64,000 nt of DNA from Obrimoposthia wandeli (GCA_977020255.1 CDROCS010000641.1:310001-374000); one strand, 5' to 3'; positions 13,001 to 53,416 are shown, counted from the first letter of the stretch. Numbers and translations: made by a program. The notes: generated by a model not told the origin, from the letters alone.

Positions 13001-13129
13001 GCAAAAACTGCGGAAGTAAATTTTGTTTAAATGTATTTCTGCAGTTTCGGTTTGATAATAAACAAATACCAATATGAATTAAATAATGCAAGTTCAAATT
13101 CAACATAACAAAAGTTCAATTCAATTGAT

Positions 13130-13517
13130 TGTTTATTTCAAGTTTTGATTTCGGTACTATTTTGTGTAGTGTTTATATAAAAATCTGGAGCTAATAGAAA
13201 AGTACAAAGTGAACTTCCTTATTTAAAATCAGAAAATTTGATACCAGCATTCAAGTTTTTATCTAAAAGATTCATATTTCGAATAATTAATAGCATATAT
13301 ACTAATGATTTTTTTTATTATTTAGACCATCTGTATTTCTAGCTAATGACATTGTTGAAACATTAAATGTATTGAACGTCGAATATGTAACTTTGTATTC
13401 CTTACCACCCTGGGGTGTAGCTTTGAAAGCAATCAAAATGAACTTTGGTAAACGATAGTCTCTGAATATTTGATATTTATTAATTTCCAAAGAACCCCGA
13501 GGAATTGAATATGTTAC
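13130..13517 (-). pseudogene. Polinton major capsid protein, C-terminal piece
   Basis: VTYSIPRGSLEINKYQIFRDYRLPKFILIAFK is near-identical to the MCP at 44296-45516. Confidence 0.93.
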
Positions 13518-13747
13518 TGTGGTGACCTTGTTCATTCTCTCTCCCTCTTTCGCCACTTTGTGTTTTTATGTGGGTGTTAATGTGTTGTAGTTCAATGTTG
13601 ACATAATTGTGGTGCAAAGCTATCATTTGTAATTTAATTATTAATTTACTAAATCAATAAATCGTTCGTCTTACCTACTCCTATAATTATCTTATCTTAT
13701 CCCTCTATTCGTTATCCTACAGTCTCTATCGCCCGCATACGCCCGCA
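13518..13747 (+). repeat. 5' LTR of the Gypsy element
   Basis: Begins TGTGG exactly where MCP homology stops, ends CA, contains AATAAA and is followed by a PBS. Confidence 0.8.
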
Positions 13748-13750
13748 AAC

Positions 13751-13762
13751 TGGTGTCAGAAG
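13751..13762 (+). promoter_or_regulatory. Primer-binding site, tRNA-Leu type (TGGTGTCAGAAG)
   Basis: Complementary to the 3' end ...CTTCTGACACCA of tRNA-Leu; lies 3 nt after the LTR. Confidence 0.75.
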
Positions 13763-16700: not shown

Positions 16701-18163
16701 CACTTCAAATCATGCAATAGGAGCAGTTTTAAATCAAACAACAGAAACCACACAACAACCAATTCTTCTCAAAGAAACTGAAAGTACACCAGACCAAATA
16801 CTCAACATACGATAGAGAATTACTGACCATATACGAGGCACTAAAACACTTCGAAACACATCTAGAAGGCAACACTTTCACAATTTACACAGATCATAAA
16901 CCTCTTCTGCACATCATCACCATAAAAACCCTTGCCACGCCAAATCAGGCCAATCAACTACATCTCGCAATTAAATTGTACTCTCAAACACATTGCAGGA
17001 AACACAAGCATCATAGCAGACACACTTTCACGCATACCACAAAACAATATACATCATAACGCAAAATATCTTCTCAGACGCAGACATCAGACACAAACAA
17101 GACATATCCGAATTCAAACGAGGAAACTTACATCTCACAAAAACAAACGACATATGGTACGAAACCACTCCCCCCGGTTTAACTAGAGTCATACTCCCAA
17201 AACCACTACGTACGACATGCATAAAACACATCCACGACTTCCATCACCCCGGCATAAAAGCAACATTCGACATAATCAAACAAACTTACATATGGCCATG
17301 CATGCGCAAAGACATCCAAACATTCATAATAAAATGCATCAAATGCAACAACAAATCACAAAAACATTACAAAATAATTCCACTCACCGTCACTAGCAAA
17401 AACGTATTCTACACAATTCACATTGATCTTGTCGGACCACAACATTCAAACACACATCTCCTGACAATAATAGACAATAACACAAGCTGGTTTTCCGCCA
17501 TACCCATACCCATCCGCATATATATGGAACAAAATATACAAACATTGGTTCACCACATACGTTTTCCCTTCAAAAATAATCACAGATCAGTGACGGCAAT
17601 TCATCAGCAAAACATTCAATGACTGCTGCAACAATAAAAACATCAAACACACAACCACAACCACTTACAACCCCCAATCAAATTGCAAAATAGAACGACT
17701 ACACTGTCGAATTAAGGAAAGTTTGACATGTTTTGACAACCAAAAGAATTGGCAACACACATTCACAACTGCATCATGGGTCTCAGAAACACCCCTCACC
17801 TAGACGACAACAAAAGCCCTGCACATCGAATATTCAAAGCACACATACCACGCATATACAACAAACACGACACGCAAACAAACACACAAATGAAACCCAA
17901 ATCTAGTGAACATGAAACCCACTCACAAGCATACATAAAAATACACAACCCTCACTCACTAGACCCAAAATACGAGGGTCCATACACCATCATCCGACAC
18001 AACACCAACAATACAACGCTCATTAACAAAAACCAAAAGCCAACGCTCATCAATAACAGAAATTTGAAAATCACCCACCCAGAGAAACACAAAAACATAC
18101 CACAAACACACAAACACAAGACAGTAAAATTCACCACCGAAATACGTCTGACAAACATCACTC

Positions 18164-18776
18164 ATCAGTACCATCTTCATTTACAACTTTTAATTTAATA
18201 TTTAGCAAAGTATCTTTCAAATCCAGATAATCTTCTTCAGATGCATGAATATTAAATTCTATATCATTTAAATTTCCACCAGTAATTGAATTGATTTGAA
18301 TTATTTCTTCTAAACTTGAATTTTCAATCACTTCTTGTGACAATGGTCTATCGAAAATACACAATTCAGATTTTATACTAGTCATTTTGGAAAATAGTAC
18401 CTTTAAGACGTTTGTTTATACTATTTAAATTATTTCCTTTACGTTTAAGACCCTTTCCATTTTGTTTAACACAATTTGCAACTTTATTTAAACTCTCAAA
18501 AGCATTATTTTTTAATTTTAGAATCAAAGTTTTGACTTCGTTTAGTGTATTTTCTTTGAGAGGTGAAATTAAGTTTTTTGGATTTGTTAACGCAGTTCCT
18601 GTCATTTCACCAAGTACATTAGCAGAACTTGTAGCAACTGCTAAACCAACATTTTTAATGAATGGAATAGCTAATCTAGAAATAGTTTGTAACAATCCAG
18701 AGCCATATTGTTTACCAATGAAATAAGGAAGTTCGCCGCCCTGTAGACTTTTGCTATAAAATTTCATATCACTCAA
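18164..18776 (-). pseudogene. MCP N-terminus plus upstream core-like ORF of the decayed lineage A copy
   Basis: MTSIKSELCIFDRP and KFYSKSLQGGELPYFIGKQYGSG are near-identical to 43898-44520. Confidence 0.95.
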
Positions 18777-35420: not shown

Positions 35421-36112
35421 CATTAGCATAGTCCTGTTTGCATTTCTGATTTTTCCTTTGAAATAAATACAATAACACGTACCTTTATCAGTTCGGTCCT
35501 CCCTTAACCAATCCTTCAATTCTGGAACAGCGAGCAATTCGTTTTAAAATTTTAGGGGTGGAGAATATTCATTCAACATTACTTTTCCATTAGTTAATAA
35601 TAATGATTATATCATATGTACCTTACAATTAATAATATATAAACAACCAGTTTAGCCATTACAAATTATAATATATATTGTGAAAATATACCATTTAACT
35701 AATTGTGAAGTGTAAAATTTTGTATTAAATTTTTTTCTAGTATTTTAAATATATTTACAAACTATACATAAAAATTTACCTAAAATTATGAATATAGGGA
35801 AAATCAGATTTTGGTATTTGCAATAAAGAAATAGAAACCAACAGAAAATAAGTAGGTTTAAAAAAATAGAATGGGAGCTATAACCGTGACCTACTTAAAA
35901 TTATTTGTACAATTGTTGTGTAATACAAATATTAGTTAGTTTACTGATTTTCTTGTAGTTTAAATTATTTTATTCTTATGGATTAATTTACTTTTGTGGC
36001 CGTATTCGACCGATGTCCACAAATATATTTTTAAAAACAAAAAATAGAACTAGGTCACATATTTTAATAATTTGAATAAATTAATATAATAATTAAAATG
36101 TTTATTTAAATG

Positions 36113-37322
36113 AGTAGGTACTTTGATGGAGTCTAGACCACTGGGGGGGGGGTCCCCCCCTTATGTGCGCACACCAAGTTAAAGGGTGTCACACCATAAG
36201 GGTGTCACACAATAGAAATGTCACACCATAGCGTGTCACACCATAAGGGTATATGTTGCCTCACCATAGGGGTGTCTTGCCACACCATAAGGGTCTGGCT
36301 CAGAAAGGTTATGAAGGTTTGAAGGTATGGTCGTGACCGTCTATGGTCGGCCAACATACCCAAGGGGTTGTGGTCGTCCATAGATCAAAGGGTCGGGGTC
36401 AGTTTTGACTTGAAGGTTTGAAGGTATGGTCGTGACCGTCTATGGTCGGCCAACATACCCAAGGGGTTGTGGTCGTCCATAATTCAAAGGGTCAAGGTCA
36501 GTTTTGACTTGAAACTTTGAAGGTATAATTAAGGTCAACTATGGTTGGCCATCACATCTAAAGGGTTGTGGTCTTCCATAATTAAAAGGGTCAAGGTCAG
36601 TTTTGACTTGAAACTTTGAAGGTATAATTAAGGTCAACTATGGTTGGCCATCACATCTAAAGGGTTGTGGTCGTCCATAATTCAAAGGGTCAAGGTCAGT
36701 TTTGACTTGAAACTTTGAAGGTATAATTAAGGTCAACTATGGTTGGCCATCACATCTAAAGGGTTGTGGTCGTCCATAGGTCAAAGGGTCGGACTCAGTT
36801 TTGACTTGAAACTTTGAAGGTATAATTAAGGTCAACTATGGTTGGCCATCACATCTAAAGGGTTGTGGTCGGTCATAAATCAAAGGGTCAAGGTCAGTTT
36901 TGACTTGAAACTTTGAAGGTATAATTAAGGTCAACTATGGTTGGTCATCACATCTAAAGGGTTGTGGTCGTCCATAGGTGAAAGGGTCGGGCTAAAAACC
37001 AAGTCAAGTTTAAAATATCAAGGTTTTAGTACATGGTTGGAATCATCTTTAGAAGGTGAATTCAGTCATAAAGTATGGTCGGTCATATATGAAGGAGTCG
37101 GGATATAGACCAAATCAAGTTTTAAATGTCAAAGTTTGAATACATGGTTGTAATCATCTTTAGAAGACGAATTCATCCATATAGGTATGGTCGTCCATAG
37201 ATGAAGGGTTAAGAAAAGTTGGAATTTCATAGTTTCAAGTACATGGTTGTATTCATCAACATATTACGAGTTTAATCATGTAAAATTTTTATGGTCGTTC
37301 ACAAGTTAAGGGTCAGATTTGG
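36113..37322 (+). repeat. Left TIR with 7 copies of a 99-bp repeat; patchy homology continues to about 37980
   Basis: Reverse complement of 46618-47535. Units start at 36318, 36417, 36516, 36615, 36714, 36813 and 36912. Confidence 0.95.
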
Positions 37323-39235
37323 AACAAACATGATAATTTTATTACATGGTTGTATTTGCATATGAAAATTGACTTCAAAAATACCCTTAAGGTCATGCAT
37401 ACTTTAAGAGGTCCTTGTGAAAAAAAAAATAAAAAATACTTGTAATTTTCTAAAATAAAAATATTTTTAAATTTAAATTTGTGCCAAATTATTTTGTTAG
37501 ATTTTGGTAAAGATAAACAAATTTTTAATTTAACAAGTTTTTAAGATATTAAAGTAACATTATTTAAAATAAATATTAAGGAAAAAGTTAATAAACTCAA
37601 ATTACTTTACTAATAGTATTATTATTATTATAATTTGATAAATATTTAAATTTACGCAAATTTTTATCCATTTTATTAATGTAATTAAACAATTCTTTGC
37701 GGAAAAATTACTTGTAATTTTGTTTTTCTTCAAAATAATAATAATTTAAATTTGCGCCAATTTAATTTGTTAGATATTAATAAAGTTAAACAAATTTTAA
37801 TTTAACAAGTTTTTAAATATTAAAGTACCAACACATCTATCAATCAATTATTCTATGTGAAAGTTCACTCTTATCAGTTAAGGAATGTATTACGTAATAA
37901 TACACACACTATTCTATGTGAAAATTTAGTACAAAGTTTTTCCCAGGCTTAGGCATCTAAAGAATTATGGTAAAATTTCTTTAAATAACTTAAATTTCAT
38001 GTCATAAGGGTCTTGGAGAAAAATACTTGTAATTTTCTAAAATAAAAATATTTTTAAAATTTAAATTTGTGCCAAATTTTTTATCGTTTCTTTGATTTAA
38101 TTAAACAAATTTGATTTTAAACATAATGTTAATTATAAAATAATTAATAATTTGATAAAAATTCATCTTACCTCAAGTTATTCATTGAATCCATTGATGT
38201 ATGTCCGTCAGCCTAATAGCATTATTCTATAATCTTACTGTAACTTTAGAAAAAATAACAAATTTATTACATTAAAATTTAAAAATTGCGCGGTTTTTTA
38301 TTGTTTACAATTAATGTATTTAAACAATGAAGAAAATAGTTTCAAACGCAAAGCAATTCATATTAACAAGTACTATTTGATATTTTTAAAATATAAATAA
38401 TTTATTTAAAAAATAATACTTCAAGTTCAAGTTAAATTTTGATAAAAGTCTGTAAAATGATAAATTCTAACATATTTTTTTTTTTAAATTACCGCCATTT
38501 TTATATTATCCCTTTTGATGTATTTAAACAAATGTATATACAAACCTAATTATTATAACTATAAGTTAAATATCTTAAATATTTATTAATTTTAAAATTG
38601 CATTATTTTATGATTGTAATTTATGCCTAAAATAATTTGTAATTTTCCAAATTAATACTAGCAACCAATGAATAACATTAATATTATGTTTACATTATAT
38701 TAATTAATATGTAAATTTTCATGTGTGTGTTTTCTCTCACATAACTTTCACATGTTATAATGATCAATTAACACTCACATAAATAATTAAAACATCCTTA
38801 TAACTTTCCTTAATTGATTTTTATTTAAACTGATAAAATTAACTTCACGTTATTCAAAGTTTACTAGTTAAAGAAATGTTTATTTATATAATTTGAGTAT
38901 TAACATTATTCGATTTACACTATAAATATTCGAAAATATCTTTAACATATTAAAAAAAAAAAAATAACTTCAATTTTTAAAATTTGTATCGAATATTGAA
39001 AATTCATTTGAAAACACATGTTTTTTGTCTATAAATTCGAATATAAAATCTTTAATTATATTGTTTTATATGTAAATAAATTAAAATATGTACATATTCG
39101 ATTATCAACTTAGTATTTATATTTATTATTCGACTTTCTAAAATAATTAAAATGTCTTGTAAAAACACATAAAATTAATTATCGATTGTATGAATTAGTA
39201 CAAGTATGAATGCAAATATGAAGGCAAATACTAGT

Positions 39236-39660
39236 AAGTGGGTTTAGCAAGTGAATGTAATTGAAAAAAAAATAAAAATAAGAGTGTCGAGAGTTTGATT
39301 GAATGCAAGTGTAATTTAGACTATAAGTAAATTAAAATAGAGTTTTCGTTGAATACATTATAGTTAGATTGAATGCAAGTATGAATGTAAGTGAATGCTA
39401 GTATGAATTTCAATACAAGTAAGTGGGTTTAGCAAGTGAATGTAATTTAAAAATAAGAGTGTCAATAGTTTGATTGAATTCGAGTGTAAGTTAGACTATA
39501 AGTAAATTAAAATAGAGTTTTCGTTGAATAAATTATAGTTAGATTGAATGTAAATGAATGCAAGTATGAATTCAAGTGAATGCAAATACAAGCAAGAGTC
39601 TTAGCAAGTGAATGTAATTGAAAAAATAAAAATAAGAGTGTCGATAGTTTGATTGAATGC
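39236..39660. repeat. About 2.3 copies of a roughly 185-bp direct repeat rich in TGAATGCA/TGAATGTA
   Basis: Units start near 39236, 39421 and 39594; the last runs into the ATG of ORF 39657. Confidence 0.85.
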
Positions 39661-40001
39661 ATTTCCTAAAAACCCCGTGGATTCATTCAATGTCCGATCC
39701 TGTGACATTGTCGAAGACATCATACAATTATTTAGTAACTGATATTAACGAAAAAGATATCAACGTATTGAATGATGTTTTTAAATATCTGAAGATTGAT
39801 GTCGAACTCGAAAATGAAAATCAATTTATGCGAAGTAATAAAAACAAGTTTTATGATTGTTCAGGAAAGAAACTTCAAGATATTCAAGAAGATGGTAAAA
39901 GTTGGATGATAGAAATCAAGATTCAAGGATATAAGATCAATTCTAAGAACGAAACCTCAATCATCTGGCGAATAAATGCTGCTAACGAATATTTTTGTTG
40001 A
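39657..40001 (+). CDS. Unknown 114-aa protein, possibly OB-fold ssDNA-binding
   Basis: Intact ORF. The C-terminal pattern FYD..GK.L...IEIKIQGYK...SIIWRI recalls T7 gp2.5/NCLDV-like SSBs (impression only). Confidence 0.45.
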   Translation: MHFLKTPWIHSMSDPVTLSKTSYNYLVTDINEKDINVLNDVFKYLKIDVELENENQFMRSNKNKFYDCSGKKLQDIQEDGKSWMIEIKIQGYKINSKNETSIIWRINAANEYFC

Positions 40002-40071
40002 ATAATAAAATGTTGTTATTGTTATAAACATGTACTTATTCTTATATATTTTATATTAATAATCATATATA

Positions 40072-40690
40072 ATGTTATTAACTAACAATTCAACTTTTCA
40101 AGTAGTAGGTCCAAGTGGTAGTGGAAAAACTTTATTTGTTTGTAGATTATTAAATTCAAAAATGTTTAAAAATAAATTTAATAAAATATATTGGCATCAA
40201 GGTGGTGACGGAGAAGCTGGTTTAACAAACCAAGAATTTAATAAAATAAAAAACATTAAAATTATTAACGGTTTTGACGAAAATTGGATGACAAGACGAT
40301 GTAATTGTTATCGATGACTTATATCAAGAGGCTAACAAAGAATCTGATTTTAATGATTTATTTACAAAAATTGCAAGACATAGAGAAGTTACTGTAATTT
40401 TTATAACCCAAAATTTATTTCATCAAGGAGGAAATCATCGTACTCGTAATCTTAATGTACATTATTTGATTTTATTCAAAAATCCTAGAGATCAAACAGT
40501 GATAGATTTTATTGCTCGTCAAGCATTTCCTCATAACAAGAGTTATTTAATTGATGCGTTTCATGATGCTACATCTTTACCTCATGGTTATTTATTTTTA
40601 AATTTTACTCAATCATGTCCTGATGATTTAAGAATTGTTACTGATATATTTAACCGTAATGGTATTACAGTCTATAAACAAAATAAATAA
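40072..40690 (+). pseudogene. A32/FtsK-like packaging ATPase, frameshifted near 40300
   Basis: Walker A GPSGSGKT, Walker B DVIVIDD, ARH motif, ITQN. A short deletion relative to lineage B shifts the frame. Confidence 0.95.
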
Positions 40691-40710
40691 TAATAATGTT
40701 TTAAAATAAA

Positions 40711-41121
40711 ATGAATTTTAAAAAGAGTATTCTTAAACATAGTAAAAGGACAGATAAAGAAGAAGTTAAAAAATTAATAAACACTGTATTATATGATCGT
40801 AATAATAATGAATTTTCAAAAAGTTTACCTTATTTTAAAACCTTAATTGACGTATCAAAAACGAATAAAATGAAAATGTTGAAATCATTTCCAATTTATG
40901 TAGTTGATGATTTAATAAAAATTTTAAATAAAATAATTTATGGTAAAATTAAACCTGATCCTAATATTTTAAAATATAAAAATTCATTAATAAATTTAGC
41001 AAATTCACGTGGTAAAATTAATAAAAGAAACATTATTTACAATCAAAATGGAGGATTCCTATTGGCCATACTGCCCGCTATAGCATCAGTAATAGCTGGT
41101 CTTATAAGTTCAAGAAGTTAG
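40711..41121 (+). CDS. Basic core-like virion protein with QNGG/FLL protease-site-like motif and hydrophobic tail
   Basis: Lys-rich; ends NQNGGFLLAILPAIASVIAGLISSRS. xGG/x resembles adenain cleavage sites. Confidence 0.8.
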   Translation: MNFKKSILKHSKRTDKEEVKKLINTVLYDRNNNEFSKSLPYFKTLIDVSKTNKMKMLKSFPIYVVDDLIKILNKIIYGKIKPDPNILKYKNSLINLANSRGKINKRNIIYNQNGGFLLAILPAIASVIAGLISSRS

Positions 41122-41155
41122 AAGTTTTAAAAAAAAAAAAAAAAAAATTATAAAA

Positions 41156-41474
41156 TTATATAAGAGTCTTACAAAGTAACATTAATAAGAAACTTACATT
41201 AAATGTTGAAGTATATTCTCCCGATGTACCAGGAACTATTGTTGTTGATGCTGATGTAGGAATCATTACCGCGGCTGCTAGTCTAAAACAATATTAAAAT
41301 TAATTTTAAAAAGAAAAAAAAATTACTTTTCATGTTTCTTACTCTGCATATGAGCATCCATTGAATATTTATTATTCATTGGTCCTGTTTGACAAATTTG
41401 GCAATTAAATCTAAATATAAATCATAATTAAAAAAATATATATATAAATATATATAATAAACTCACGTATTCAT
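41156..41474 (-). CDS. Spliced zinc-finger minigene (matrin/JAZ-type C2H2): join(41474-41467, 41410-41327, 41282-41198, 41167-41156)
   Basis: GT-AG introns of 56, 44 and 30 nt with donors GTGAGT, GTAATT, GTAAGT; phases are consistent. Gives MNTFNCQICQTGPMNNKYSMDAHMQSKKHEKLAAAVMIPT... The third intron is optional because it is in frame. Confidence 0.75.
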
Positions 41475-41820
41475 TTTGAGTCTTGATTTATTTAAATTAA
41501 AGAAAAATAACAAAATAGTAAATTATATTTAATTTAACATTTCAATTTATAATAGATATCCTATTATGTAATTTCAATTATTGATAATAATATAATTATC
41601 TCAATTGCTACAATTGAATTGTGCCTATTTAATTATGATAGTTGCCTTAATAACGAAAATTATAATAATAATATTAAATAATTACATTCTTTCGTTTTAT
41701 ATATATATATATATAAACACGTTAAAATATATTTAACTTTTAATTCAAATAATAAAATAATGGGGATAAACAATACAAAGATGTCTAACTTATTTATAAA
41801 TTTTAATTCTTCATGCTGCA

Positions 41821-42846
41821 ATGGAAAAGATTTGGAACAATCCAGAAGATCCAGACGGTTATACAGGGTTAGAAAAATTGACAAAAAGAGTCAAACAATC
41901 AAAAACAAACACACAAAAATGGTTAAGAAATGAATTATCATATAGTCTGAATAAACCTTTAAGACGTAAATTCCCTACTAGATCATATAAAACTAATGGT
42001 ATTAATTCGTTATGGCAGATGGATTTAATGGAAATGATTCCTTATTCTTCAGTAAATAACGGATTCAAGTATATTTTAACTTGTATTGATGTATTTAGTC
42101 GTTTTGCAAGGGCAGTTGGTGTTAAATCAAAATCAGGTATTGATTTATTACATGCAATAGAATCTTTAATCGTTGATGATGTACCAGTAAATATCCAAAC
42201 TGATGAATGTAAAGAATTTTTTAATTCACATGTTAAGAAATTATTCAAATCTAAAAATATCAATCATTATGCAGTATATTCTCAATATAAAGCTGCAGTT
42301 GTTGAAAGATTTAATCGGACTTTAAGAGATCGAATGAAAAAATATTTTACTAAACAGGGTAATAAGAAATGGATTGAAGTTTTACCGAAAATTATTTATG
42401 CTTATAATCATTCTAAACATAGAGGATTAAATGATTTAAAACCTGTTGATATAAATAAGAAAAATGAATTTGATATTTTGTTGAGTCAAAATTCAAAAGT
42501 CAAAAAGAGTAAGGCCAAGTGTAAATTTGATGATTATGTTCGAATTTCTAAAATAAGTATTAGTCCATTTATTAAAAATTTTAATCAAAATTGGAGTGAT
42601 GAGGTTTTTCAAATTCATGATATTAATTATAAACAAAGTCCAATAATGTATGTTTTAAAAGATATTGACAATAACATAATTAAAGGAAAATTTTACGAAA
42701 AAGAATTGCAAGTAATCGATAAACCAGAAATATTTAGAATTCAAGAAATTTTAGAGACTAAAGGTCGTGGTAAGAATAAACAATATTACGTAAAGTGGCA
42801 CGGATACTCTGAACCTTCTTGGATATTCGCTTCTCAAATTGAATAA
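41821..42846 (+). CDS. Retroviral-like DDE integrase with C-terminal chromodomain (341 aa, intact frame)
   Basis: WQMD, QTDECKEF, VVERFNRTL; chromodomain FRIQEIL...YYVKWHGYSEPSWI. Confidence 0.96.
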   Translation: MEKIWNNPEDPDGYTGLEKLTKRVKQSKTNTQKWLRNELSYSLNKPLRRKFPTRSYKTNGINSLWQMDLMEMIPYSSVNNGFKYILTCIDVFSRFARAVGVKSKSGIDLLHAIESLIVDDVPVNIQTDECKEFFNSHVKKLFKSKNINHYAVYSQYKAAVVERFNRTLRDRMKKYFTKQGNKKWIEVLPKIIYAYNHSKHRGLNDLKPVDINKKNEFDILLSQNSKVKKSKAKCKFDDYVRISKISISPFIKNFNQNWSDEVFQIHDINYKQSPIMYVLKDIDNNIIKGKFYEKELQVIDKPEIFRIQEILETKGRGKNKQYYVKWHGYSEPSWIFASQIE

Positions 42847-43860
42847 TGTCAAAATATATTATTTTACCTAGTAATAGTTGTCCGAGTACTCAACCTAGCA
42901 ATACAGCCAATCAATTTACTGTAGATTGGGAAAACTCTCTAAATTTAGATGGTGAATGGGAGGTTGCCTTGACTGAATTTGTATTTAATTATACTCCTTT
43001 AACAATACAAACTAATTCGAAAATACTTTATAAAACGGAAAAGATAGAAATGAAAACTTTCGATGTATCTTTTGCAATTTTAAATGGATTAATTTTTAAT
43101 AATTTAAATAATGTTTTCAATTTCAAAATTACAAAGGATCAAAAATTAGAAATAAGTACAATTAACAGTATTCATCGAATGTTGTTAAAATTCGAAACTT
43201 TAGAAGAATCAAAAATTATAGGTTTTAATGAAATACAAAAAAGTTCTAGTCATGTTATAACAAGTGATGAAATTGTTGACATAAATAAAAATATTCATGC
43301 TAAAATGAGAATTACAATTTATTTTTTTAGCTGAATATGAATACGAAATAAAATTTAATCAAAATTATTTGATACAAGATAGTTCTTCATTATGTAATAT
43401 TATAGCCAGTAAATGTAATGAAATTTTTAAAAGCTGTAATATAGATTCAAACGGATTATTTGATATTTTAATAAAGAAAAATGTAAAATCAGTTTTATTT
43501 GACGAAAAACTTGCATCTTTATTAGGTTTAAATAATGTTTTCTTTGAGAAACGAATTAAAGGTTTTCAAAAACCAACACTTTCTAGCTCATATAATCAAA
43601 TGTATATTTATACTAGTTTAACAGATTCTGTCTTAGTAGGATCTGATTATGTTCCACTGTTAAAGTCTATTTGGTTAAAATCATTAAAATATCGATATGG
43701 AGATGTAGTAAATGTTAAAATTGATAATCCAATGTACTTGAAAATGAGAGATTCAAGTATTAATAGAATCGAGGTAAATATACGTGATGATTCTGGTAAT
43801 TTAATTCCATTTTCATATGAAGCAAAAACTAGTTTAACTCTTCATTTACGTAAAGTATAA
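42846..43860 (+). CDS. Minor capsid (penton-like) protein with a +1 frameshift in a T7 run near 43325
   Basis: YIILPSNS...NTANQFTV...GEWEVALTE; MYIYTSL...; IEVNIRDDSG...SLTLHLRK. Removing one T joins the two ORFs. Confidence 0.85.
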
Positions 43861-43897
43861 ACAATATAAATATATTTAAAATATAAACACATATAAA

Positions 43898-44303
43898 ATG
43901 AATACATCAATTATAAAATTTTATAGCAAAAGTCAACAGGGCGGTGAACTTCCCTATTTCATTGGTAAACAATATGGATCTGGTTGGTATCAAACTATTT
44001 CTAGATTAGCTATTCCATTTATTAAAAAAGTTGGTTTATCAGCAGCTACAAGTGCTGCCAATGTAATTGGTGAAACGGTAGGAACTGCGTTATCAAATCC
44101 AAAAAACATAATTTCATCTCTCAAAGAAAATACAATCAAAGAAGTCAAAACTTTGATTCCAAAATTAAAAAAATAATGCTGTTGAGAGTTTAAATAAAGT
44201 CGCAAATTGTGTTGAACAAAATGGAAAGGGTCTTAAACGTAAAAGAAATAATTTAAATAGTATAAACAAACGTCTTAAAGGTACTATTTTCCAAAATGAC
44301 TAG
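43898..44303 (+). CDS. Core-like protein with QxGG and GxG motifs; +1 frameshift in an A7 run near 44170
   Basis: QQGGELPYFIGKQYGSGW. The copy at 18378-18776 has A6 and an open frame. Confidence 0.85.
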
Positions 44304-45516
44304 TATAAAATCTGAATTGTGTATTTTCGATAGACCACTACCTCAAGTAGTGATTGAAAATTCAAGTTTTGAAGAAATATTTCCAATCAATTCAATTACT
44401 GGAAAAAATTTAAATGACATAGAATTTAATATTCATGCATCTGAAGAAGATTATCTGGATTTGAATGATACTTTCTTAAATATTAAATTAAAAGTTGTAA
44501 ATGAAGATGGTACTGATTTAATCAAAGATAACGATGTAATTCCAGAGAATTACATGTTTCAAACTTTGTTTAGAGATGTTATTCTAACACTTAATAATGT
44601 AAAGGTTGAAGGAGGAAATGGAACGTATACTCATAAGGCTATATTCGATACTCTTTTGAATTTTAGTAGTGATACCAAGTATACTAACCTTGAATGTAGT
44701 GGGTATGATGATGATGCAGAAAATCGTAAACAATGGATTAGTGAATCTAAAATATTTTCATTGTGTAATTCAATTAGATTAGATTTCTTTGATCAACCAA
44801 AATATTTGATTCCAGGGATTAATGTTCATTTGAGATTTATGAGAAATCAGCATAATTTTTTGCTCTATTCAGAAACTTCAAAACCAATTATTCAAATTCT
44901 AGATGCTAGATTGTATGTTAGAAGAGTAAAAGTTGATTCTTCAGTAATGATTGGACATCAGTTAGGTTTGCAAAGTCAGAATGCAGTTTACCCAATTAGA
45001 AAAACTCAGTTAGTAACATATTCAATTCCTCAGGGTTCTTTGGAACTTAATAAAGATCAAATATTCGGAGACTATCGTTTACCCAAGTTCATTTTGATTG
45101 CTTTCAAAGATACACCTCAGGGTGGTAAGGAATACAAAGTTAAATCTTCTACGTTCAATACATTTAATGTTTCAACAATATCATTAGCTAGAAATACAGA
45201 TTATCGAGAAACTTATAATCTAGATAATAACAATTTTTCATTAGCATATATGCAGTCAATTATTCGAAATATGAATATTTTAGATAAAAACTTGAATAAC
45301 GGTATCAGATTTTCTGATTTTAAATCAGGAAGTTCGATTTTCACTTTTCTATTAGCACCAGATTTTGATATAAACACTACTCAAGTGCCTAAAACTGGTA
45401 ATTTAAGACTTGAAATTAGATTTAATTCTCCTTTGACCGTTCCAACAAGTGTTTTGATTTACGGAATATTTGATTCCGAAATTCAGATTACGAAAAATAA
45501 AACTGTGATTGTATGA
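44296..45516 (+). CDS. Major capsid protein (double jelly-roll, Polinton type), 406 aa intact
   Basis: KSELCIF, IEF.I.....YLDLNDT.L, LDFFDQPKYLIPGINV.LRF.RN, LYVRRVKV, GNLRLEIRF...L..P..VLIY. Confidence 0.93.
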   Translation: MTSIKSELCIFDRPLPQVVIENSSFEEIFPINSITGKNLNDIEFNIHASEEDYLDLNDTFLNIKLKVVNEDGTDLIKDNDVIPENYMFQTLFRDVILTLNNVKVEGGNGTYTHKAIFDTLLNFSSDTKYTNLECSGYDDDAENRKQWISESKIFSLCNSIRLDFFDQPKYLIPGINVHLRFMRNQHNFLLYSETSKPIIQILDARLYVRRVKVDSSVMIGHQLGLQSQNAVYPIRKTQLVTYSIPQGSLELNKDQIFGDYRLPKFILIAFKDTPQGGKEYKVKSSTFNTFNVSTISLARNTDYRETYNLDNNNFSLAYMQSIIRNMNILDKNLNNGIRFSDFKSGSSIFTFLLAPDFDINTTQVPKTGNLRLEIRFNSPLTVPTSVLIYGIFDSEIQITKNKTVIV

Positions 45517-45889
45517 AGTAAGCTTATTGTATATTATATTCTTTATTTAAATTAGTACTTTAGAAATTTATAAATCCGGAAAAATATTATTGAATAACAA
45601 ATTTAATGGAGTATATTCATTGGATAAAATTCCATCATTAAAACCCGGAGGTTACATTATCAATACTCATACTTCAAATCTGCCAGGCGAACATTGGATA
45701 GCAATATTCGTTGACAGATTCGAGATTCGAGTGTTTGATCCTTTTGGATTCTATTATCCTTCAAAGTTGGTGTCTACACTTGAAAAAGAAAACATTCCAG
45801 TCTACTATAATCGAGTTAAATGTCAGAATCCATTAACTAAAAACTGCGGACCTCTGAGTCTTTTATGGTTGAAACTTCAACAGAAATAA
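45513..45889 (+). CDS. Adenain-like cysteine protease with a 38-nt intron: join(45513-45517, 45556-45889)
   Basis: Catalytic residues in GEHW, FDPFG, Q and NCG. ATG AA|GTAAGC...ATTAG|T ACT TTA GAA ATT gives MNTLEI; the unspliced frame has no in-frame ATG. Confidence 0.88.
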
Positions 45890-45942
45890 TTTTAAGTATA
45901 AACAAATATATATCATTTTAGTATTTCATTTTATTTTTTCAA

Positions 45943-46395
45943 ATGGCTTTTATTGATTTAGAATGTTTTATTGATAATAATGGAGAATATATTCCAAAGG
46001 AATTATGTATAATGTATGTGAATGATATGACTTGTTCATTTCATTATGTGTTTAAAAATCAAATACCATGGAGTAGTTTATCATTTACAGTTAAAAGAAA
46101 AAATCTATATTTGATAAATCATCATCATCAGTTATCCTGGTTTGAAGGTGAAAGCTCTGATATTCATATTGATGATGTTGAAACAATATTCTATGTTATG
46201 GATTCTATTGATGGAAAGAAAATTAATTTAGTGAAACGAATGTTTCCAAATTTGAGAATTGTGAATTATAATAAAAGTTTCAAAAATTTAAAGAAAATGC
46301 CAAAAAATATTCGATGTCCGTTTAGAAAACACGGAAAACATTGTGCTTATTTGAAATGTTTTTCTCTATGTATTGATTATATAAATTGTATATAA
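45943..46395 (+). CDS. 150-aa protein with N-terminal FIDLEC motif (possible DnaQ/DEDD-like fold) and a C-terminal Cys/His cluster
   Basis: Intact ORF, also present in the copy at 11064-11518. The fold assignment is inferred from the DxE beta-strand only. Confidence 0.7.
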   Translation: MAFIDLECFIDNNGEYIPKELCIMYVNDMTCSFHYVFKNQIPWSSLSFTVKRKNLYLINHHHQLSWFEGESSDIHIDDVETIFYVMDSIDGKKINLVKRMFPNLRIVNYNKSFKNLKKMPKNIRCPFRKHGKHCAYLKCFSLCIDYINCI

Positions 46396-46617
46396 ATATA
46401 TTTATTAAGGATATTTTATTTTAATATATAATTTATGTTATTTAAATAAATTTTACCATATTTCTTTAAATGCATAAGCCTGGAAAAAAAAAAAACTTTG
46501 ATCTACATTTTCACATAGAATAGTGTGTGTATTATTACGTAATACATTCTTTAACTGATAAGAGTGAACTTTCACATACCGTAATTGATTGAATACTATA
46601 TAATTCCTTAATTTATG

Positions 46618-47535
46618 CCAAATCTGACCCTTAACTTGTGGACGACCATAAAATTTTTACATGATTAAACTCGTAATAAGTTGACGAATACAACCATGTA
46701 CTTGAAACTACAAAATTCCAAATTTTCTTTAACCCTTCATCTATGGACGACCATACCTATATGGATGAATTCGTCTTCTAAAGATGAATACAACCATGTA
46801 TTAAAACTTTGACATTTAAAACTTGATTTGGTCTATATCCCGAACCCTTCATATATGACCGACCATACTTTATGACTGAATTCACCTTCTAAAGATGATT
46901 CCAACCATGTATTAAAACCTTGATATTTTAAACTTGACTTTGTTTTTAGCCCGACCCTTTCACCTATGGACGACCACAACCCTTTAGATGTGATGGCCAA
47001 CCATAGTTGACCTTAATTATACCTTCAAAGTTTCAAGTCAAAACTGAGTCCGACCCTTTGATTTATGACCGACCACAACCCTTTAGATGTGATGGCCAAC
47101 CATAGTTGACCTTAATTATACCTTCAAAGTTTCAAGTCAAAACTGAGTCCGACCCTTTGACCTATGGACGACCACAACCCCTTGGGTATGTTGGCCGACC
47201 ATAGACCGTCACGACCATACCTTCAAACCTTCAAGTCAAAACTGACCCCGACCCTTTGATCTATGGACGACCACAACCCCTTGGGTATGTTGGCCGACCA
47301 TAGACGGTCACGACCATACCTTCAAACCTTCATAACCTTTCTGAGCCAGACCCTTATGGTGTGGCAAGACACCCCTATGGTGAGGCAACATATACCCTTA
47401 TGGTGTGACACGCTATGGTGTGACATTTCTATGGTGTGACACCCTTATGGTGTGACACCCTTTAACTTGGTGTGCGCACACAAGGGGGTGGGACCCCCCC
47501 CCCCCAGTGGTCTAGACTCCATCAAAGTACCTACT
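46618..47535 (-). repeat. Right TIR with 4 copies of the 99-bp repeat; patchy homology from about 46445
   Basis: Near-identical reverse complement of the left TIR. Confidence 0.95.
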
Positions 47536-50500
47536 TAAATGGAATCGAAATAACATGAAATTTATATATTTAAATATTATTAACATATTAAAAACAACAT
47601 ATTAATATTAACAAATAATAAATTATAAAAATAACTATAAATAAAAAATGCATATGACAATTTTAATGTATAAAATTATATTATATTAAAATACATTCCA
47701 AAAATGCATTTCAAACATTCTAAATCTTTTTAAATGATTTTACACATAAAATTAAATTAAAAATAAATGGTAAAACATCCAAAATTAATATTTCAACTTC
47801 TTTGAATAAATTGTTTTAATAATACTTATTTATTTTTGTGAGTTTTTAGAGGCAAATTTAAAATTAGGAATGACTGTCGAATACTGCCACTTTTGTTATT
47901 ACACTTGATCCAAATTTGGATCATAGCTTTAAATATACTCCATGAGGATGATATGATAACACTTATACGAGTAGAGGGCAAATCCCTTATTTACAATATG
48001 AACACAACTCAGCTTTCATGTAAGAAAAAATTATTTTGAACTTTTTTATAACTGATAAAACCCATTAATGCATGCAACTATACGTCACATATTTTCCGTT
48101 TACTTATATTCATCCAAGGCCCCACTGATATAATGAACTCATGTCTTCCTAATTTGAGAATGTAATTTTTTATTTAGGAAAATGTTGTAATATTTTTCCC
48201 CAACAAAAAATCCTATAAGTGTTTGTTTTTATTTGATGTCAAATCCACGTAACAAAAATTAAACGCCTGCTAAAATCAAGAAATGTTTATTCATTATTTA
48301 ATTTATAAAAGGATTACATGCTACAATTCCAATTGAAACAAACAGATAAATAAGTACATAGATATATAAATAAATTTAAAACAACGAATATGAGTAGAAG
48401 AATGTGTATTAAGCAAAATGTTTTAGACACATGTATATTTTAAAATTTATGATTACTACATCTAATTTTAAAAAGATGAAATTTTTTACTAAAATAATAT
48501 AGAATATATGATAAAAGGAATTGGTAAAGATGACCTTAAGATGACTCAATTTGAAAACAGTTTCTGAGATCTTTAATTAAGATTTGTAACAATTCCAACT
48601 GTTGTGATCGAGTCTCGCAATGGAGACGCCACAGTATGTATACAATGGAAACATTTAATTATCTTAATTAGTAGAAATTCAAAAAAGTTCAGTTAAACTA
48701 GAAAAACTAATTAAAGATGAATGAAAGTTGTTAAAAAAAAGTATATAGATTGTTTAGCGTTTCAGTTCATTGAATAAAAATTTTAAATAATTTATTAATG
48801 TATCGGTCTATCTCACAAAATTGTACAAAAATTGGGTAAATATATAATAGATTCTGACCATAATTAAATTATTTAAAATATATTAGTATTTTTACATAAA
48901 ACATCATATCAATTATTCTACTGAACTAAATACGTTTATTTTGGTTTAATTTTGAGGGAATCAATTTTCTGTAATGGAAATGAAAAGAATCATTAGAAAC
49001 TTTGAATTGAAGATAATGTTTCTCTTGTTAGGTGTAGAATTGTCTTTAATAAAATGGATATTTTATTAACGTTCAGTTACTATTTATTGATAGTAATATA
49101 TATATTTATATTAATGCTAATTAAGGTTTAGTTTGAAATTAAAATTGACATCAAATTAGGGATTTGTATGTATGACATTTTAAATACTGTATAGACCCGC
49201 TAATACAAGGACCACTGGGGTCAGTAAATGTCGTCTCATATATTGAGATATTTAATTTCAAATTTGAAAATTTAAAAAAACTCTAAAATGCAAGTTTATG
49301 AGCAATTTTTCACTATAGATTTTGTTAGAATTTCTTTTATAAAGTCATCTAAGTAGTGTTGAATAGTATAAAGAACCTGAAACACTAGATCATTTAATTT
49401 ATTTAAAATAAATGTGTTCAAAATAATATGCAGATGATAAGTGTTTTCTATTTGCAGTCATTTATATACTAAAATTTGATGAAGTTTCTTGACCATTTAG
49501 ATAATGATAAACTCCTTTTGATCAATATTTAAATGAGTTAAAATATCAACCAGGCCATTAGCCTCAATACCACAATTTGGGCGTGATAATTAAATAGCAA
49601 AATCTGTTTCGAAATTAAAAAAAAGTATTTGAATAAGGATGTGTTGAAAATTCCCGATATTGGTATAATTTATCAAACAAAACTACGGGATTGTAGTACA
49701 ATTGTTAATTTCCTTTTAATTGAAGATGGTGATACCCATTATTATTGCGGAGTTTGTAATTGAAATATTTTTCGAACTGAGGTTGCTTATGATAAACATA
49801 AAACTCATTCTAATTTTAATACTTATACTACAACATTATTCACTATACCAGATGATAAATATTGAGAATTCACATATTGGTCAAAGTCAGTTCAACCTCG
49901 TTTTGCAGTTTACGCTGATTTTGAGACTATTTTAGAACCTGATGTGACTGTTAAACTTGTATATATATATACTCCAATTGCAGTTGGAATGTTGTTGAAA
50001 TATAATGTTACAAATACTATCAATATTTGTAATATTATGGTTTAGAGTCTAAGTTTAAGCCAATCTTTACCACATAAGAAATTTAAGTGTATGAATTATA
50101 ATTTTGATGATATTTTAAATTTAGTTAAAAGCAATAAGGATTTGACTAAAAACGCATGGGGTTATATTGTTAAAATCTATTTACATATTCCAGACTGCAT
50201 ACATAATAAAGTTGATGATTTACCTATTGGACTACATAAGATGTGTCCATCAAACCCAAAACTCCTAAATTGCTTATGACACGTAATAATAAAGAGCATT
50301 ATATAATACATTACCATCTACTCCAATTTTATGTTTTTCTTCGTATATAATAGGGCTATTTGGTTTAAACATGCATCCTTTTAAAACAGTATATTGATTT
50401 TAATTCAAACAAGCGTTCAACTAGTTTCAATAAGTTTAAATATGAATTTTATGAGTTAAAATAATTTGGTTTACGATAAAGCCGTTGAGAATCTTAAGAA

Positions 50501-50558
50501 ATGCTTGATATTAGATTATGTAATAATTATAAACGATTTGTAAAATTAGTGTCTAGTC

Positions 50559-52275: not shown

Positions 52276-53416
52276 GTCTAGTCCCATCATACTCAAATAA
52301 ATTATGATTTGAATTTAGTTTTTATATAGAAACACAAAATATCTCGATCAAGCTGTACTCGATCTATTTAAATTACGAATGTATCAATGTTGAGCTTGAA
52401 CTTAAATGGTTTTATTCGAATTGTAGCCTTGGATACAGATTCCTTTTTACTTGAGTGTACAAATATTAATAAAGATACATTGCTTAAAGAAATGATTAAG
52501 GAGGGGTATATTTTTAACTAAAAACTTTGTAATATTTTTATAGAATGTATTTCCTAAAAACCATTAGTTAACAATAATTTACCAAAATTAAAGTTTTTTT
52601 CAGGTAACCCATTTTTCATTTTTTTGAGACTGATTTTGTTATTTCTGCAAATTAGTGAAATTTAAATTGAGGTTATATAAGTTTTGTATTTATAAATAAA
52701 GTAGTAAATAATGCATACGTTATATTAAAATTATTATCAAAATTTTCAGTCACTTCCAACTATGGTATATTTTTAATAATTACTTTCCTGATAATTCTTT
52801 TATTTTAATTTAAAAAACAACAAATTGTCTCATTTAGAAATACTTTGAATACATGACTAGAGTATTAATTTGTATAAAAGGTTAACCCGTTTTATTACAC
52901 AAAATATTGATTTTACACGTTCTAAAATAGAATAATTAGTTATTACAATTAATTATTTATTAGGAGATGTTACGAAAACATTAAATGCTTCTATTTGTTT
53001 CTTCTAGATTCCATTCTTGTAAATGAAAGTTATATTTAGGTTTCTAATTCAGAAAAATTCTAATTTCTAAATTAAATTAGGCTCATTTATTTAAAAAATG
53101 TTCACTATACATCGAAATTTCATAATCTGTAACTGTGATATCATTTTCCATAATAATTTGTTCAGTATCTACATTCGATATATAAATTTTACTAACTAAA
53201 TTAGTCAATTAATTATATAACAATATTACAACTGCATCATCAGATATTAAATCACAATTTAAAATATTTTTTGTCGTATTCAGAATGCAAAATTATTTCT
53301 AAAAATCTTATTTTCATTATAGAGAAAATGTTCATATTGCACTGTGTTATCGGTATGAAAAACTAATAATTAAAAATCACATATGGCTATGTATTTGATG
53401 AAACTTTAAGTAAAAA

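What the first reader, a model, noticed from the sequence alone, without database searches (positions are those of the whole stretch)
36113..47535. Polymerase-less Polinton-like provirus that keeps the full virion module and integrase
Seen: a matching 6-bp TSD and near-identical TIRs delimit the whole element. ATPase, INT, mCP, MCP, protease and two core-like ORFs are present. No pPolB or helicase motif occurs inside, and the largest unexplained gap (about 38.0-39.6 kb) is AT-rich, repetitive and too short for one. Established: Polintons are defined by pPolB plus INT, and polymerase-less relatives usually carry a helicase or primase instead. Inference: this is a satellite-like virus that makes its own capsid and integrates but borrows replication from a helper or the host. 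The young-looking TIRs suggest it moved in this form.
Basis: partly seen in the sequence, partly recalled or inferred. Interest (0 to 1): 0.9.

Follow-up and report, generated by a model that had tools for sequence, protein, structure and literature searches.

The report
Polymerase-less Maverick/Polinton derivative, recently integrated
This is a real, recently inserted 11.4-kb virus-like transposon (Maverick/Polinton type) in an animal genome that has lost its own DNA polymerase but keeps its integrase and capsid genes, so it most likely depended on polymerase-carrying relatives to copy itself; similar cases have already been reported in butterflies.

Summary
Window 36113-47535 is bounded by long terminal inverted repeats and a perfect 6-bp target duplication (TAAATG). 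It carries one gene block: a small ORF, packaging ATPase, a core-like ORF, rve/chromo integrase, minor capsid, a small ORF, double-jelly-roll major capsid, a short adenain-like protease and a MAEL-like protein.

No polymerase, helicase or primase is inside, by Pfam, tblastn or a family pPolB profile run over six frames.

Relatives found in metagenome and assembly contigs are 16.7-19 kb. All ten informative ones encode a 1,090-1,220-aa pPolB. Here that gene is followed by the repeat after 23 nt.

An older, decayed copy in the window also lacks pPolB there. Where the two copies differ, this one keeps the family's conserved residues 21:2.

So this is best read as a non-autonomous, helper-dependent derivative lineage, not a one-off deletion.

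Caveats: three genes each carry one frame change, only two copies are visible, and polB-lacking mobile polintons are already reported in a 2026 preprint. I rate it a new member of a known kind, of moderate interest.

The parts
36107..36112 (.). Left copy of the 6-bp target-site duplication (TAAATG)
   Evidence: Read directly; identical to 47536-47541
36113..38007 (+). Left terminal inverted repeat. From the outside in: terminus 5'-AGTAGG..., a G10-T-C7 tract, 16-nt repeats x4.4, 99-nt repeats x6.5, 111-nt repeats x2.2, then a less similar inner part.
   Evidence: The G/C homopolymer tract occurs nowhere else in the window. Relatives' TIRs have similar C/G runs and an AGTAG-like terminus.
38008..39656 (.). 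Left subterminal non-coding region. It is AT-rich, with degenerate repeat units and a 175-nt tandem repeat that abuts the first gene.
   Evidence: No protein similarity to any relative's gene. Relative L082 has a 1.67-kb interval between its left repeat array and the homologous small ORF, with two small ORFs in it.
39657..40001 (+). Small conserved ORF (114 aa), function unknown
   Evidence: Uninterrupted. Homologues in relatives lie upstream of TBP/ATPase.
40072..40690 (+). Packaging ATPase (A32/FtsK-like P-loop). One frame change, no in-frame stop.
   Evidence: Walker A GPSGSGKT. Pox_A32 below threshold (E=0.0036). 62-80% identity to the 209-213-aa ATPases of relatives, in two frames.
40711..41121 (+). 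Small conserved ORF (136 aa) with a hydrophobic C-terminus; the 'core-like' candidate
   Evidence: Uninterrupted; syntenic homologues. The homologue in L082 has a sub-threshold Adeno_PX hit (E=0.0067), and the one in L083 carries a 'weak' precomputed Adeno_PX flag.
41821..42846 (+). Integrase: rve core plus C-terminal chromodomain (341 aa), uninterrupted
   Evidence: PF00665 E=1.6e-9, above the gathering score; Chromo sub-threshold. D68, D128, E162 and the chromodomain aromatic residues are invariant in 24 relatives and present here. 924 homologues found.
42846..43860 (+). Putative minor (penton) capsid gene. One frame change relative to the single 353-442-aa ORF of relatives.
   Evidence: The two halves match the N- and C-terminal halves of relatives' gene between INT and MCP. 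The fold was not tested.
43898..44295 (+). Small conserved ORF upstream of the MCP (104-113 aa in relatives). One frame change near its end.
44296..45516 (+). Major capsid protein, double jelly-roll (406 aa), uninterrupted
   Evidence: 131 homologues, best 59-60% identity. AlphaFold2 pLDDT 88.5. Fold matches PBCV-1, SGIV, Sputnik and mavirus MCPs in PDB. Best BFVD match is a Cotesia bracovirus-borne protein at 23% identity, followed by adintovirus and MELD virus proteins.
45590..45889 (+). Short adenain-like cysteine protease (99 aa), uninterrupted
   Evidence: Peptidase_C5 sub-threshold. Same length as in relatives (89-100 aa). Invariant H35, D50, Q79, C86 all present.
45943..46395 (+). MAEL-domain-like protein (150 aa), uninterrupted. 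In relatives this is the last gene before the convergent pPolB.
   Evidence: 154 homologues. AlphaFold2 pLDDT 96.8. Best PDB folds are the Maelstrom MAEL domain, then arenavirus NP / DEDDh exonucleases.
46396..46418 (.). 23-nt spacer between the MAEL-like gene and the right TIR. This is the place where relatives carry a 3.3-3.7-kb convergent pPolB gene.
46419..47535 (-). Right terminal inverted repeat (1,117 nt)
47536..47541 (.). Right copy of the 6-bp target-site duplication (TAAATG)
10757..18768 (-). Second, older copy of the same lineage (right-hand part only). It is 86-92% identical in DNA, interrupted by two insertions, and has several frame changes and stops. Its MAEL-like gene is followed within about 130 nt by TIR-type repeats, with no pPolB.

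Best explanation
The element is an integrated, non-autonomous derivative of a pPolB-encoding Maverick/Polinton family. The family is animal, adintovirus-like, of the type that carries a MAEL-like gene.

What the lineage lost and kept:
- Lost: the convergent pPolB gene that normally lies between the MAEL-like gene and the right TIR, and the TBP gene.
- Kept: both TIRs (the cis-acting ends), its own rve/chromodomain integrase, and the capsid and maturation genes.

Proposed working (inferred): a linear copy is made from the TIR ends by the protein-primed polymerase of a co-resident, polymerase-carrying relative. The element supplies its own capsid, ATPase and protease for packaging. Its integrase inserts the copy with a 6-bp duplication. 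The chromodomain may favour repeat-rich chromatin, which would explain the cluster of family debris in this window.

Shown: the structure, the absence of any replicase, the presence of pPolB in all informative relatives, the youth of the insertion, and conservation of the capsid-side genes in this lineage.

Inferred: that the loss is shared by descent with the second copy, that the element transposed in this form, and that a helper supplied the polymerase.
For: - TIR and TSD are intact, and the outer TIR is 99% identical.
- No pPolB, helicase or primase by Pfam, PHROGs, tblastn or a family profile HMM over six frames.
- Every ORF in the element has a syntenic homologue in pPolB-encoding relatives, so none is a substitute replicase.
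- Full-length relatives with both TIRs are 16.7-17.4 kb (L007, L003).
- 9 of 10 relatives with at least 2 kb beyond the MAEL-like gene have pPolB(-) within 0.15-1.4 kb of it. The tenth (L001) has pPolB at the other end.
- The second copy in the window also has TIR-type repeats within about 130 nt of the MAEL-like gene.
- Copy versus old copy: dS 0.16, dN 0.073, ratio 0.46.
- At sites where the two differ and the family majority is clear, this copy keeps the majority residue 21 times and the old copy 2 times. The lineage leading to this copy therefore stayed under purifying selection.
- Integrase and protease catalytic residues are intact.
- pPolB pseudogene remnants of the family at 18744-19187 and 49427-52518 show that polymerase-carrying relatives lived in this genome.
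- Precedent: polB-lacking, TIR-flanked, polymorphic polinton derivatives in Pieris mannii.
Against: - Only two copies can be seen. The host genome is not in any searchable collection.
- Sequence homology between the two copies past the stop of the MAEL-like gene is solid for only about 30-35 nt. It then becomes fuzzy (79% over 58 nt), so two independent deletions are not excluded.
- The old copy is truncated and rearranged on its other side, and directly abuts a pPolB fragment.
- Three genes (ATPase, minor capsid, small ORF) each have one frame change as assembled, so the copy is not now self-sufficient even for packaging.
- No intact helper, and no helper sharing these termini, is visible.
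- The closest relatives are only about 60-66% identical in protein, so ancestry has to be inferred across a large distance.
Confidence: 0.55

Rival explanations
1. One-off decay. An autonomous, pPolB-encoding element inserted here, and a later internal deletion in the chromosome removed pPolB. It never moved without its polymerase. The second copy lost its pPolB independently.
For: All informative relatives encode pPolB. Internal deletions are common in integrated elements. The window shows heavy rearrangement of neighbouring copies. Homology of the two copies beyond the MAEL-like gene is short and fuzzy. The copy already has three frame changes.
Against: The insertion is young: the outer TIR is 99% identical, there are no in-frame stops in about 6.7 kb of coding sequence, and conserved residues are kept 21:2. 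The deletion would have to run exactly from the end of the last gene to the inner edge of the TIR, leaving 23 nt. A second, separate clean loss of TBP would also be needed. The older copy lacks pPolB at the same place.
Confidence: 0.22
2. Polymerase-independent life cycle. The element needs no pPolB at all. It persists as host-replicated DNA and spreads only through its integrase, or by vertical inheritance and segmental duplication.
For: The integrase is intact and carries a chromodomain. The two copies lie within 25 kb of each other in inverted orientation, which local duplication could also produce.
Against: From established knowledge, retroviral-type integrases join pre-formed linear ends and do not excise a donor copy, so a new linear copy has to be synthesised. 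This copy has its own TSD and unique flanks. Purifying selection on the capsid, protease and MAEL-like genes is not expected for DNA that merely sits in the chromosome.
Confidence: 0.1
3. Assembly artefact. A collapse or misjoin in repeat-rich sequence removed the polymerase region (or other sequence) from the assembled copy. The three frame changes are homopolymer-length errors.
For: The TIRs hold long tandem arrays and homopolymer tracts. All three gene lesions are single frame changes with no substitution-type stop, which is the typical error type of long-read assemblies in AT-rich DNA.
Against: The junction between the MAEL-like gene and the TIR is unique sequence, not repeat. There are no N runs in the window. 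The independent older copy shows the same lack of pPolB. A collapse would not create matching TSDs.
Confidence: 0.08

Closest known systems
Autonomous Mavericks/Polintons of the same family (metagenome/assembly contigs L003, L007, L019, L082, L083, L085; animal 'adintovirus'-like polintons)
   Same: The conserved order ATPase - small ORF - INT - minor capsid - small ORF - MCP - protease - MAEL-like gene. Long TIRs with tandem repeats and C/G homopolymer runs. An AGTAG-like terminus. Protein identity of 55-66% for MCP and INT.
   Different: The relatives are 16.7-19 kb. They encode a 1,090-1,220-aa pPolB convergent at the right end, plus TBP and several small ORFs. This element is 11.4 kb and lacks pPolB and TBP.
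polB-lacking polinton-related structural variants of the butterfly Pieris mannii (Pannagram preprint, bioRxiv 10.1101/2025.02.07.637071)
   Same: Flanked by TIRs, retain other hallmark polinton genes, lack polB, and are inferred to have stayed mobile. The authors raise the same question of how they are mobilised. 'mael-associated' polintons are described in the same paper.
   Different: There, the loss of polB coincides with a LINE or gypsy insertion (cargo), and mobility is shown by presence/absence polymorphism. Here there is no cargo and a clean gene-to-TIR junction. Mobility is inferred only from the TSD, TIR youth, a second copy and substitution patterns.
Polinton-like viruses (PLVs)
   Same: Double-jelly-roll MCP, penton, A32-type ATPase; no canonical pPolB.
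   Different: PLVs mostly lack rve integrase and encode other replication proteins, such as primase-helicase or helicase-pPolB fusions (PMC5499653, PMC11161782). This element has the integrase and no replicase. By sequence it belongs inside a bona fide Polinton family.
Mavirus-type virophages
   Same: Own capsid module and rve integrase; a replication cycle that depends on another virus.
   Different: Virophages encode their own pPolB derivative and helicase and depend on a giant virus for transcription (PMC11161782). The dependence proposed here is on the polymerase of a close relative.
Transpovirons (the mirror-image case)
   Same: Derived from the polinton/PLV stock by loss of one module.
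   Different: Transpovirons lost the structural module and keep pPolB (PMC11161782). This element lost pPolB and keeps the structural module.
Internal-deletion non-autonomous DNA transposons and defective helper-dependent adenovirus genomes (my own knowledge, not tested here)
   Same: The ends are kept, an essential trans-acting enzyme is lost, and propagation relies on an intact relative.
   Different: Such derivatives usually lose most coding capacity. This one keeps about 6.7 kb of conserved genes that appear to have stayed under selection.

Membership tests
Polinton/Maverick (Polintoviricetes) | [quoted passage not shown] | tested here: not met
   No hit by Pfam, by tblastn with seven relatives' pPolB, or by a family profile HMM over six frames with filters off.
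Polinton/Maverick (Polintoviricetes) | Retrovirus-like (rve, DDE) integrase | tested here: met
   PF00665 above the gathering score. D68/D128/E162 invariant among 24 relatives and present here, plus a chromodomain.
Polinton/Maverick (Polintoviricetes) | Long terminal inverted repeats and a 6-bp target-site duplication | tested here: met
Polinton/Maverick (Polintoviricetes) | Double-jelly-roll major capsid protein | tested here: met
   AlphaFold2 pLDDT 88.5. Foldseek E about 1e-15 to PBCV-1, SGIV, Sputnik and mavirus MCPs.
Polinton/Maverick (Polintoviricetes) | Single-jelly-roll penton (minor capsid) protein | tested here: inconclusive
   Homologous to relatives' gene between INT and MCP. No Pfam or PDB sequence hit. 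The gene carries one frame change.
Polinton/Maverick (Polintoviricetes) | A32/FtsK-type packaging ATPase and adenain-like maturation protease | tested here: met
   ATPase: Walker A, Pox_A32 below threshold, 62-80% identity to relatives' ATPase, one frame change. Protease: Peptidase_C5 below threshold, H/D/Q/C invariant and present.
Polinton-like viruses (PLV) | Alternative replication protein (primase-helicase, S1H-pPolB fusion or similar), usually with no rve integrase | tested here: not met
   No helicase or primase domain in any ORF. An rve integrase is present.
Non-autonomous (helper-dependent) derivative of an autonomous element | Keeps the family's termini but lacks an enzyme that autonomous relatives encode | tested here: met
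Non-autonomous (helper-dependent) derivative of an autonomous element | Several independent insertions share the same deletion (amplified in the deleted form) | tested here: inconclusive
   Only two copies are visible. The second also lacks pPolB after the MAEL-like gene, but junction homology is short. The host genome cannot be searched with these tools.
Non-autonomous (helper-dependent) derivative of an autonomous element | A co-resident autonomous helper whose polymerase recognises the same termini | not testable with these tools
   Only decayed pPolB remnants without recognisable TIRs are in the window.

The most novel reading that the evidence does not exclude
This is a long-lived satellite lineage of Mavericks/Polintons. 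It lost its protein-primed polymerase (and TBP) well before this insertion. It has since been kept under purifying selection for its own capsid, protease, integrase and MAEL-like genes. In this reading it is a capsid-encoding, integrating parasite of the replication machinery of related polintons, rather than a dead deletion copy.
Probability: 0.35. Interest if true: 0.7.

Novelty: new member of a known kind. Interest (0 to 1): 0.45.

Why it matters
Polintons are defined by encoding their own polymerase. A recent insect pangenome study asked how polB-lacking but apparently mobile polintons are mobilised.

This copy is an unusually clean case:
- there is no cargo insertion;
- the junction where the polymerase is missing is exact;
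- the integrase and major capsid gene are intact;
- a second, older copy serves as an internal time marker;
- substitution patterns suggest the polymerase-less lineage stayed functional for some time.

If a genome-wide census confirms this, it would show that helper-dependent 'satellite' relationships exist within animal Mavericks. That bears on how virophage-, PLV- and transpoviron-like module losses arise. If the census does not confirm it, this is one more decayed transposon copy.

Tried and rejected
1. Remnants of pPolB in the 38.0-39.66 kb gap or anywhere in the element: none found. The gap is the normal left subterminal region.
2. Testing whether the pPolB fragment 2 kb to the right (49427-52518, + strand) belongs to this element. 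It lies outside the TIR and TSD, is in the wrong orientation for the family architecture, is heavily decayed and is split by a nested 1.7-kb transposon. I rejected it as part of the element.
3. Testing whether the diverged copy at 20.6-23.9 kb and the old copy at 10.8-18.8 kb are two halves of one element. Rejected: in the stretch where they overlap they are 73% and 92% identical to this element.
4. IMG/VR search with an MCP profile: no relatives.
5. PDB sequence searches for the MAEL-like protein, the minor capsid and the ATPase: nothing significant. Pfam on family members of the MAEL-like protein: nothing.
6. Rfam and tRNA scans of the window: nothing.
7. The flanks are unique in the window and among fetched loci.
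8. Host identification failed. The window's proteins are not in the protein collection (best MCP hit 60%). I can only say 'metazoan, possibly arthropod', from a BEL/Pao-type gag domain, a Spin-doc zinc finger and the Cotesia bracovirus MCP match.
9. I considered an intron as the explanation for the ATPase frame change. Rejected: the two matching halves abut with no room for one.
10. Contigs with only 0.7-1.3 kb beyond the MAEL-like gene (L010, L030, L032, L034, L038, L084) show no pPolB. They are too short to count either way.

Full report
OBSERVATION

The outermost 40 nt at 36113-36152 and 47496-47535 are perfectly complementary. TAAATG flanks both ends, at 36107-36112 and 47536-47541.

Aligned in correct register, the arms share 96.3% identity over 1,106 columns. 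There is a clear gradient: 99% over about 340 outer nt, then 97.6%, about 92%, and 84.5% at the inner edge.

The arms are unequal in length. The left is 36113-38007 and the right is 46419-47535. The left has more copies of a 99-nt repeat (6.5 against 3.6) and about 510 extra nt.

The termini carry a G10-T-C7 tract found nowhere else in the window. They also carry 16-nt, 99-nt and 111-nt tandem arrays.

The window contains no N.

GENES

All genes lie on the + strand:
- a 114-aa ORF;
- a P-loop ATPase, with Walker A and Pox_A32 below threshold;
- a 136-aa ORF;
- a 341-aa integrase with an rve core (above Pfam's gathering score) and a chromodomain, with D68/D128/E162 invariant among 24 relatives;
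- the putative minor capsid gene;
- a small ORF;
- a 406-aa major capsid protein;
- a 99-aa adenain-like protease with the invariant H35/D50/Q79/C86;
- a 150-aa ORF.

The MCP model (pLDDT 88.5) is a double jelly-roll. It matches the PBCV-1, iridovirus, Sputnik and mavirus capsid proteins in PDB. Its best match among predicted viral structures is a Cotesia bracovirus-borne protein (23% identity), followed by adintovirus and MELD virus proteins.

The 150-aa protein folds with pLDDT 96.8. Its best structural matches are the MAEL domain of Maelstrom from Bombyx and Drosophila, then arenavirus NP and other DEDDh exonucleases. 'mael-associated' polintons have been described in insects.

- ATPase, minor capsid gene and the small ORF upstream of the MCP each show one frame change relative to relatives.
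- No gene shows an in-frame stop within the matched stretches.
- The other six genes (114-aa ORF, 136-aa ORF, integrase, MCP, protease, MAEL-like gene) are uninterrupted.

All three lesions are single frame changes in very AT-rich DNA, so homopolymer-length assembly errors cannot be excluded.

NO REPLICASE

- Pfam and PHROGs find no polymerase, helicase or primase in any ORF of 45 aa or more.
- tblastn with the pPolB of seven relatives finds nothing inside the element.
- A profile HMM built from five full-length family pPolBs was run with all filters off over every stop-to-stop piece of the window. Inside the element it gives only an E=3 noise hit. Elsewhere in the window it readily finds pPolB remnants at 18.8-19.2 kb (-) and 49.4-52.5 kb (+).
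- Every ORF of the element has a syntenic homologue in polymerase-encoding relatives. None can therefore be a replacement replicase.

THE FAMILY

The MCP has 131 homologues and the integrase 924. All come from metagenome or assembly contigs, and the best are 59-66% identical. None is in IMG/VR.

From 85 fetched loci the gene order is strongly conserved: small ORF - TBP - ATPase - small ORF - INT - minor capsid (one or two copies) - small ORF - MCP - protease - MAEL-like gene, followed by a convergent pPolB of 1,090-1,220 aa and then the TIR.

Two relatives show both TIRs and measure 16.7 and 17.4 kb.

Of ten relatives with at least 2 kb of sequence beyond the MAEL-like gene, nine have pPolB(-) starting 0.15-1.4 kb after it. 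The tenth (L001) has pPolB at the opposite end, pointing inward. At its right end it has a 407-aa gene and a TIR array.

Relatives' TIRs also carry tandem arrays, C/G homopolymer runs and an AGTAG-like terminus.

WHERE THE POLYMERASE IS MISSING

In this family that is the wrong end.

The 1.65-kb non-coding stretch at 38008-39656 matches in length the 1.67 kb between the left repeat array and the homologous small ORF, which lies in the same orientation, in relative L082. In L082 that interval holds two small ORFs. It is the ordinary left subterminal region.

The real gap is at the right. The stop of the MAEL-like gene (46395) is separated from the inner edge of the right TIR (46419) by 23 nt. 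Relatives have a 3.3-3.7-kb gene there.

The element also lacks TBP. Only 70 nt separate the 114-aa ORF from the ATPase.

DID IT MOVE IN THIS FORM?

Three lines of evidence bear on this.

(a) Youth. The outer TIR is 99% identical. The identity gradient suggests that most inner divergence predates insertion. No substitution-type stops occur in about 6.7 kb of coding sequence.

(b) A second copy of the same lineage lies at 10757-18768 on the minus strand.
- It is 86-92% identical in DNA and is interrupted by two insertions, one carrying a BEL/Pao-type gag domain. It has several frame changes and stops.
- Its MAEL-like gene is followed within about 130 nt by the family motif, two 99-nt repeat units and a 16-nt repeat unit. 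It too has no room for pPolB.
- Parsimony favours one shared loss. However, clear homology between the copies past the stop codon lasts only about 30-35 nt (79% over 58 nt).

(c) Substitution pattern.
- Between the two copies dS=0.16, dN=0.073 and the ratio is 0.46.
- I polarised amino-acid differences against the family alignments. This copy keeps the family-majority residue 21 times and the old copy twice (binomial p about 3e-5, my calculation).
- Decay is therefore on the old copy's branch. The lineage leading to this copy stayed under purifying selection on MCP, protease and the MAEL-like gene.

Together these favour a polymerase-less lineage that continued to propagate, which requires a polymerase supplied in trans. 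This is inference. No intact helper is visible, and only two copies can be examined.

CONTEXT

The window is a graveyard of this family:
- the old copy;
- a third, about 72%-identical central fragment at 20.6-23.9 kb;
- a pPolB fragment that directly abuts the old copy (18744-19187);
- a pPolB pseudogene at 49427-52518, split by a 1.7-kb TIR transposon that carries a Spin-doc zinc-finger ORF.

The integrase chromodomain may explain such clustering (inference).

The host is a metazoan, judged from the BEL/Pao gag domain and the Spin-doc finger. It could not be identified further.

COMPARISON WITH KNOWN SYSTEMS

By sequence the element belongs to a bona fide Maverick/Polinton family, but it fails the defining pPolB criterion.

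It is not a PLV, because it has an integrase and no alternative replicase.

The closest described phenomenon is the polB-lacking, TIR-flanked, polymorphic polinton derivatives of Pieris mannii. Their authors explicitly ask how such elements are mobilised. Those carry LINE or gypsy insertions; this one has a clean junction and no cargo.

I therefore file it as a new member of a known kind. Interest is moderate. The more novel reading, a long-lived capsid-encoding satellite lineage, has a probability of about 0.35.

Scripts printed all tblastn match bounds. One search printed stop-to-stop piece bounds for the other copies. For frame-disrupted genes those bounds indirectly bracket the disrupted places.

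In some searches I also gave start coordinates for the second halves of two disrupted genes as alignment inputs. The halves were kept as separate rows.

From then on, the scripts that assessed gene lesions printed counts only. This report gives counts without places.

Noticed in passing
window 45943-46395; homologues in L001, L003, L006, L007, L082-L085: The last gene before pPolB is a conserved protein of about 150 aa. Its confident model (pLDDT 96.8) best matches the MAEL domain of the piRNA-pathway factor Maelstrom, then arenavirus NP / DEDDh exonucleases. E20, C125 and C134 are invariant or nearly so, and D5 is nearly so. It may be a nuclease or a piRNA-pathway mimic encoded by the virus-like element.
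   Followed up: partly
L001 3689-4267, L007 4637-5071, L082 3634-4080, L084 4416-4877, L085 2335-2769; L003 3952-4941, L084 2491-3462: Most relatives encode a TATA-binding-protein homologue (PF00352) upstream of the ATPase. Some also encode a MATH/TRAF-domain protein. The window's element has neither.
   Followed up: partly
L001 (ena:ERZ25039515:contig_28610), whole locus: A variant architecture. pPolB lies at the opposite end, pointing inward. At the usual pPolB position there is a 407-aa gene, weakly similar to the N-terminal region of another relative's pPolB, followed by a 229-nt TIR array.
   Followed up: partly
window 10757-18768 (-): An older, right-hand copy of the same lineage. It is interrupted at about 11.9-13.2 kb (ORF with the BEL/Pao-type gag domain DUF1759) and at about 13.5-18.2 kb. 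The second stretch has GC about 39%, GC skew about -0.5 and AT skew about +0.35, and its nature was not determined.
   Followed up: partly
window 18744-19187 (-) and 49427-52518 (+): Two pPolB pseudogene remnants. The larger one lacks roughly residues 387-728 of the family protein. The smaller one covers roughly residues 411-550, which lies inside that missing stretch. This may be coincidence or the trace of a rearrangement.
   Followed up: no
window 50525-52309: A 1.7-kb transposon with about 50-nt inverted ends, nested in the pPolB pseudogene. It carries an ORF with a Spin-doc zinc finger (51237-51749, -) and a near-perfect 36-nt x4.3 tandem repeat (52023-52177).
   Followed up: partly
window 20590-23934 (+): A third, more diverged copy (about 72% DNA identity) covering ATPase to the small ORF before the MCP, with frame changes and a stop. 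Against the main element, dN/dS is 0.07-0.14 for ATPase and INT, which means divergence as functional lineages.
   Followed up: partly
window 19850-20181 and 28396-28731: A direct repeat pair (82-91% identical) 8.5 kb apart that brackets the third copy. It could be LTR-like or a segmental duplication. Not determined.
   Followed up: no
window 36113-38007 vs 46419-47535: Identity between the TIR arms falls steadily from 99% at the tips to 84.5% at the inner edge. This fits homogenisation acting from the termini inward, rather than uniform decay after insertion.
   Followed up: partly
L082 11383-14790, L083 8029-11313, L085 11235-13610: The family's pPolB carries an Endonuclease VII-like (PF02945) segment around residues 444-479.
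   Followed up: no
L001, L082, L083 between INT and MCP: The closest relatives carry two tandem paralogues of the putative minor capsid gene and of the small ORF after it. The window's element has one of each.
   Followed up: no
window about 5400-10200 (-): A higher-GC (about 40%) stretch with short ORFs, one matching the EF-Tu GTP-binding domain. It is probably exons of a host gene next to the old copy.
   Followed up: no
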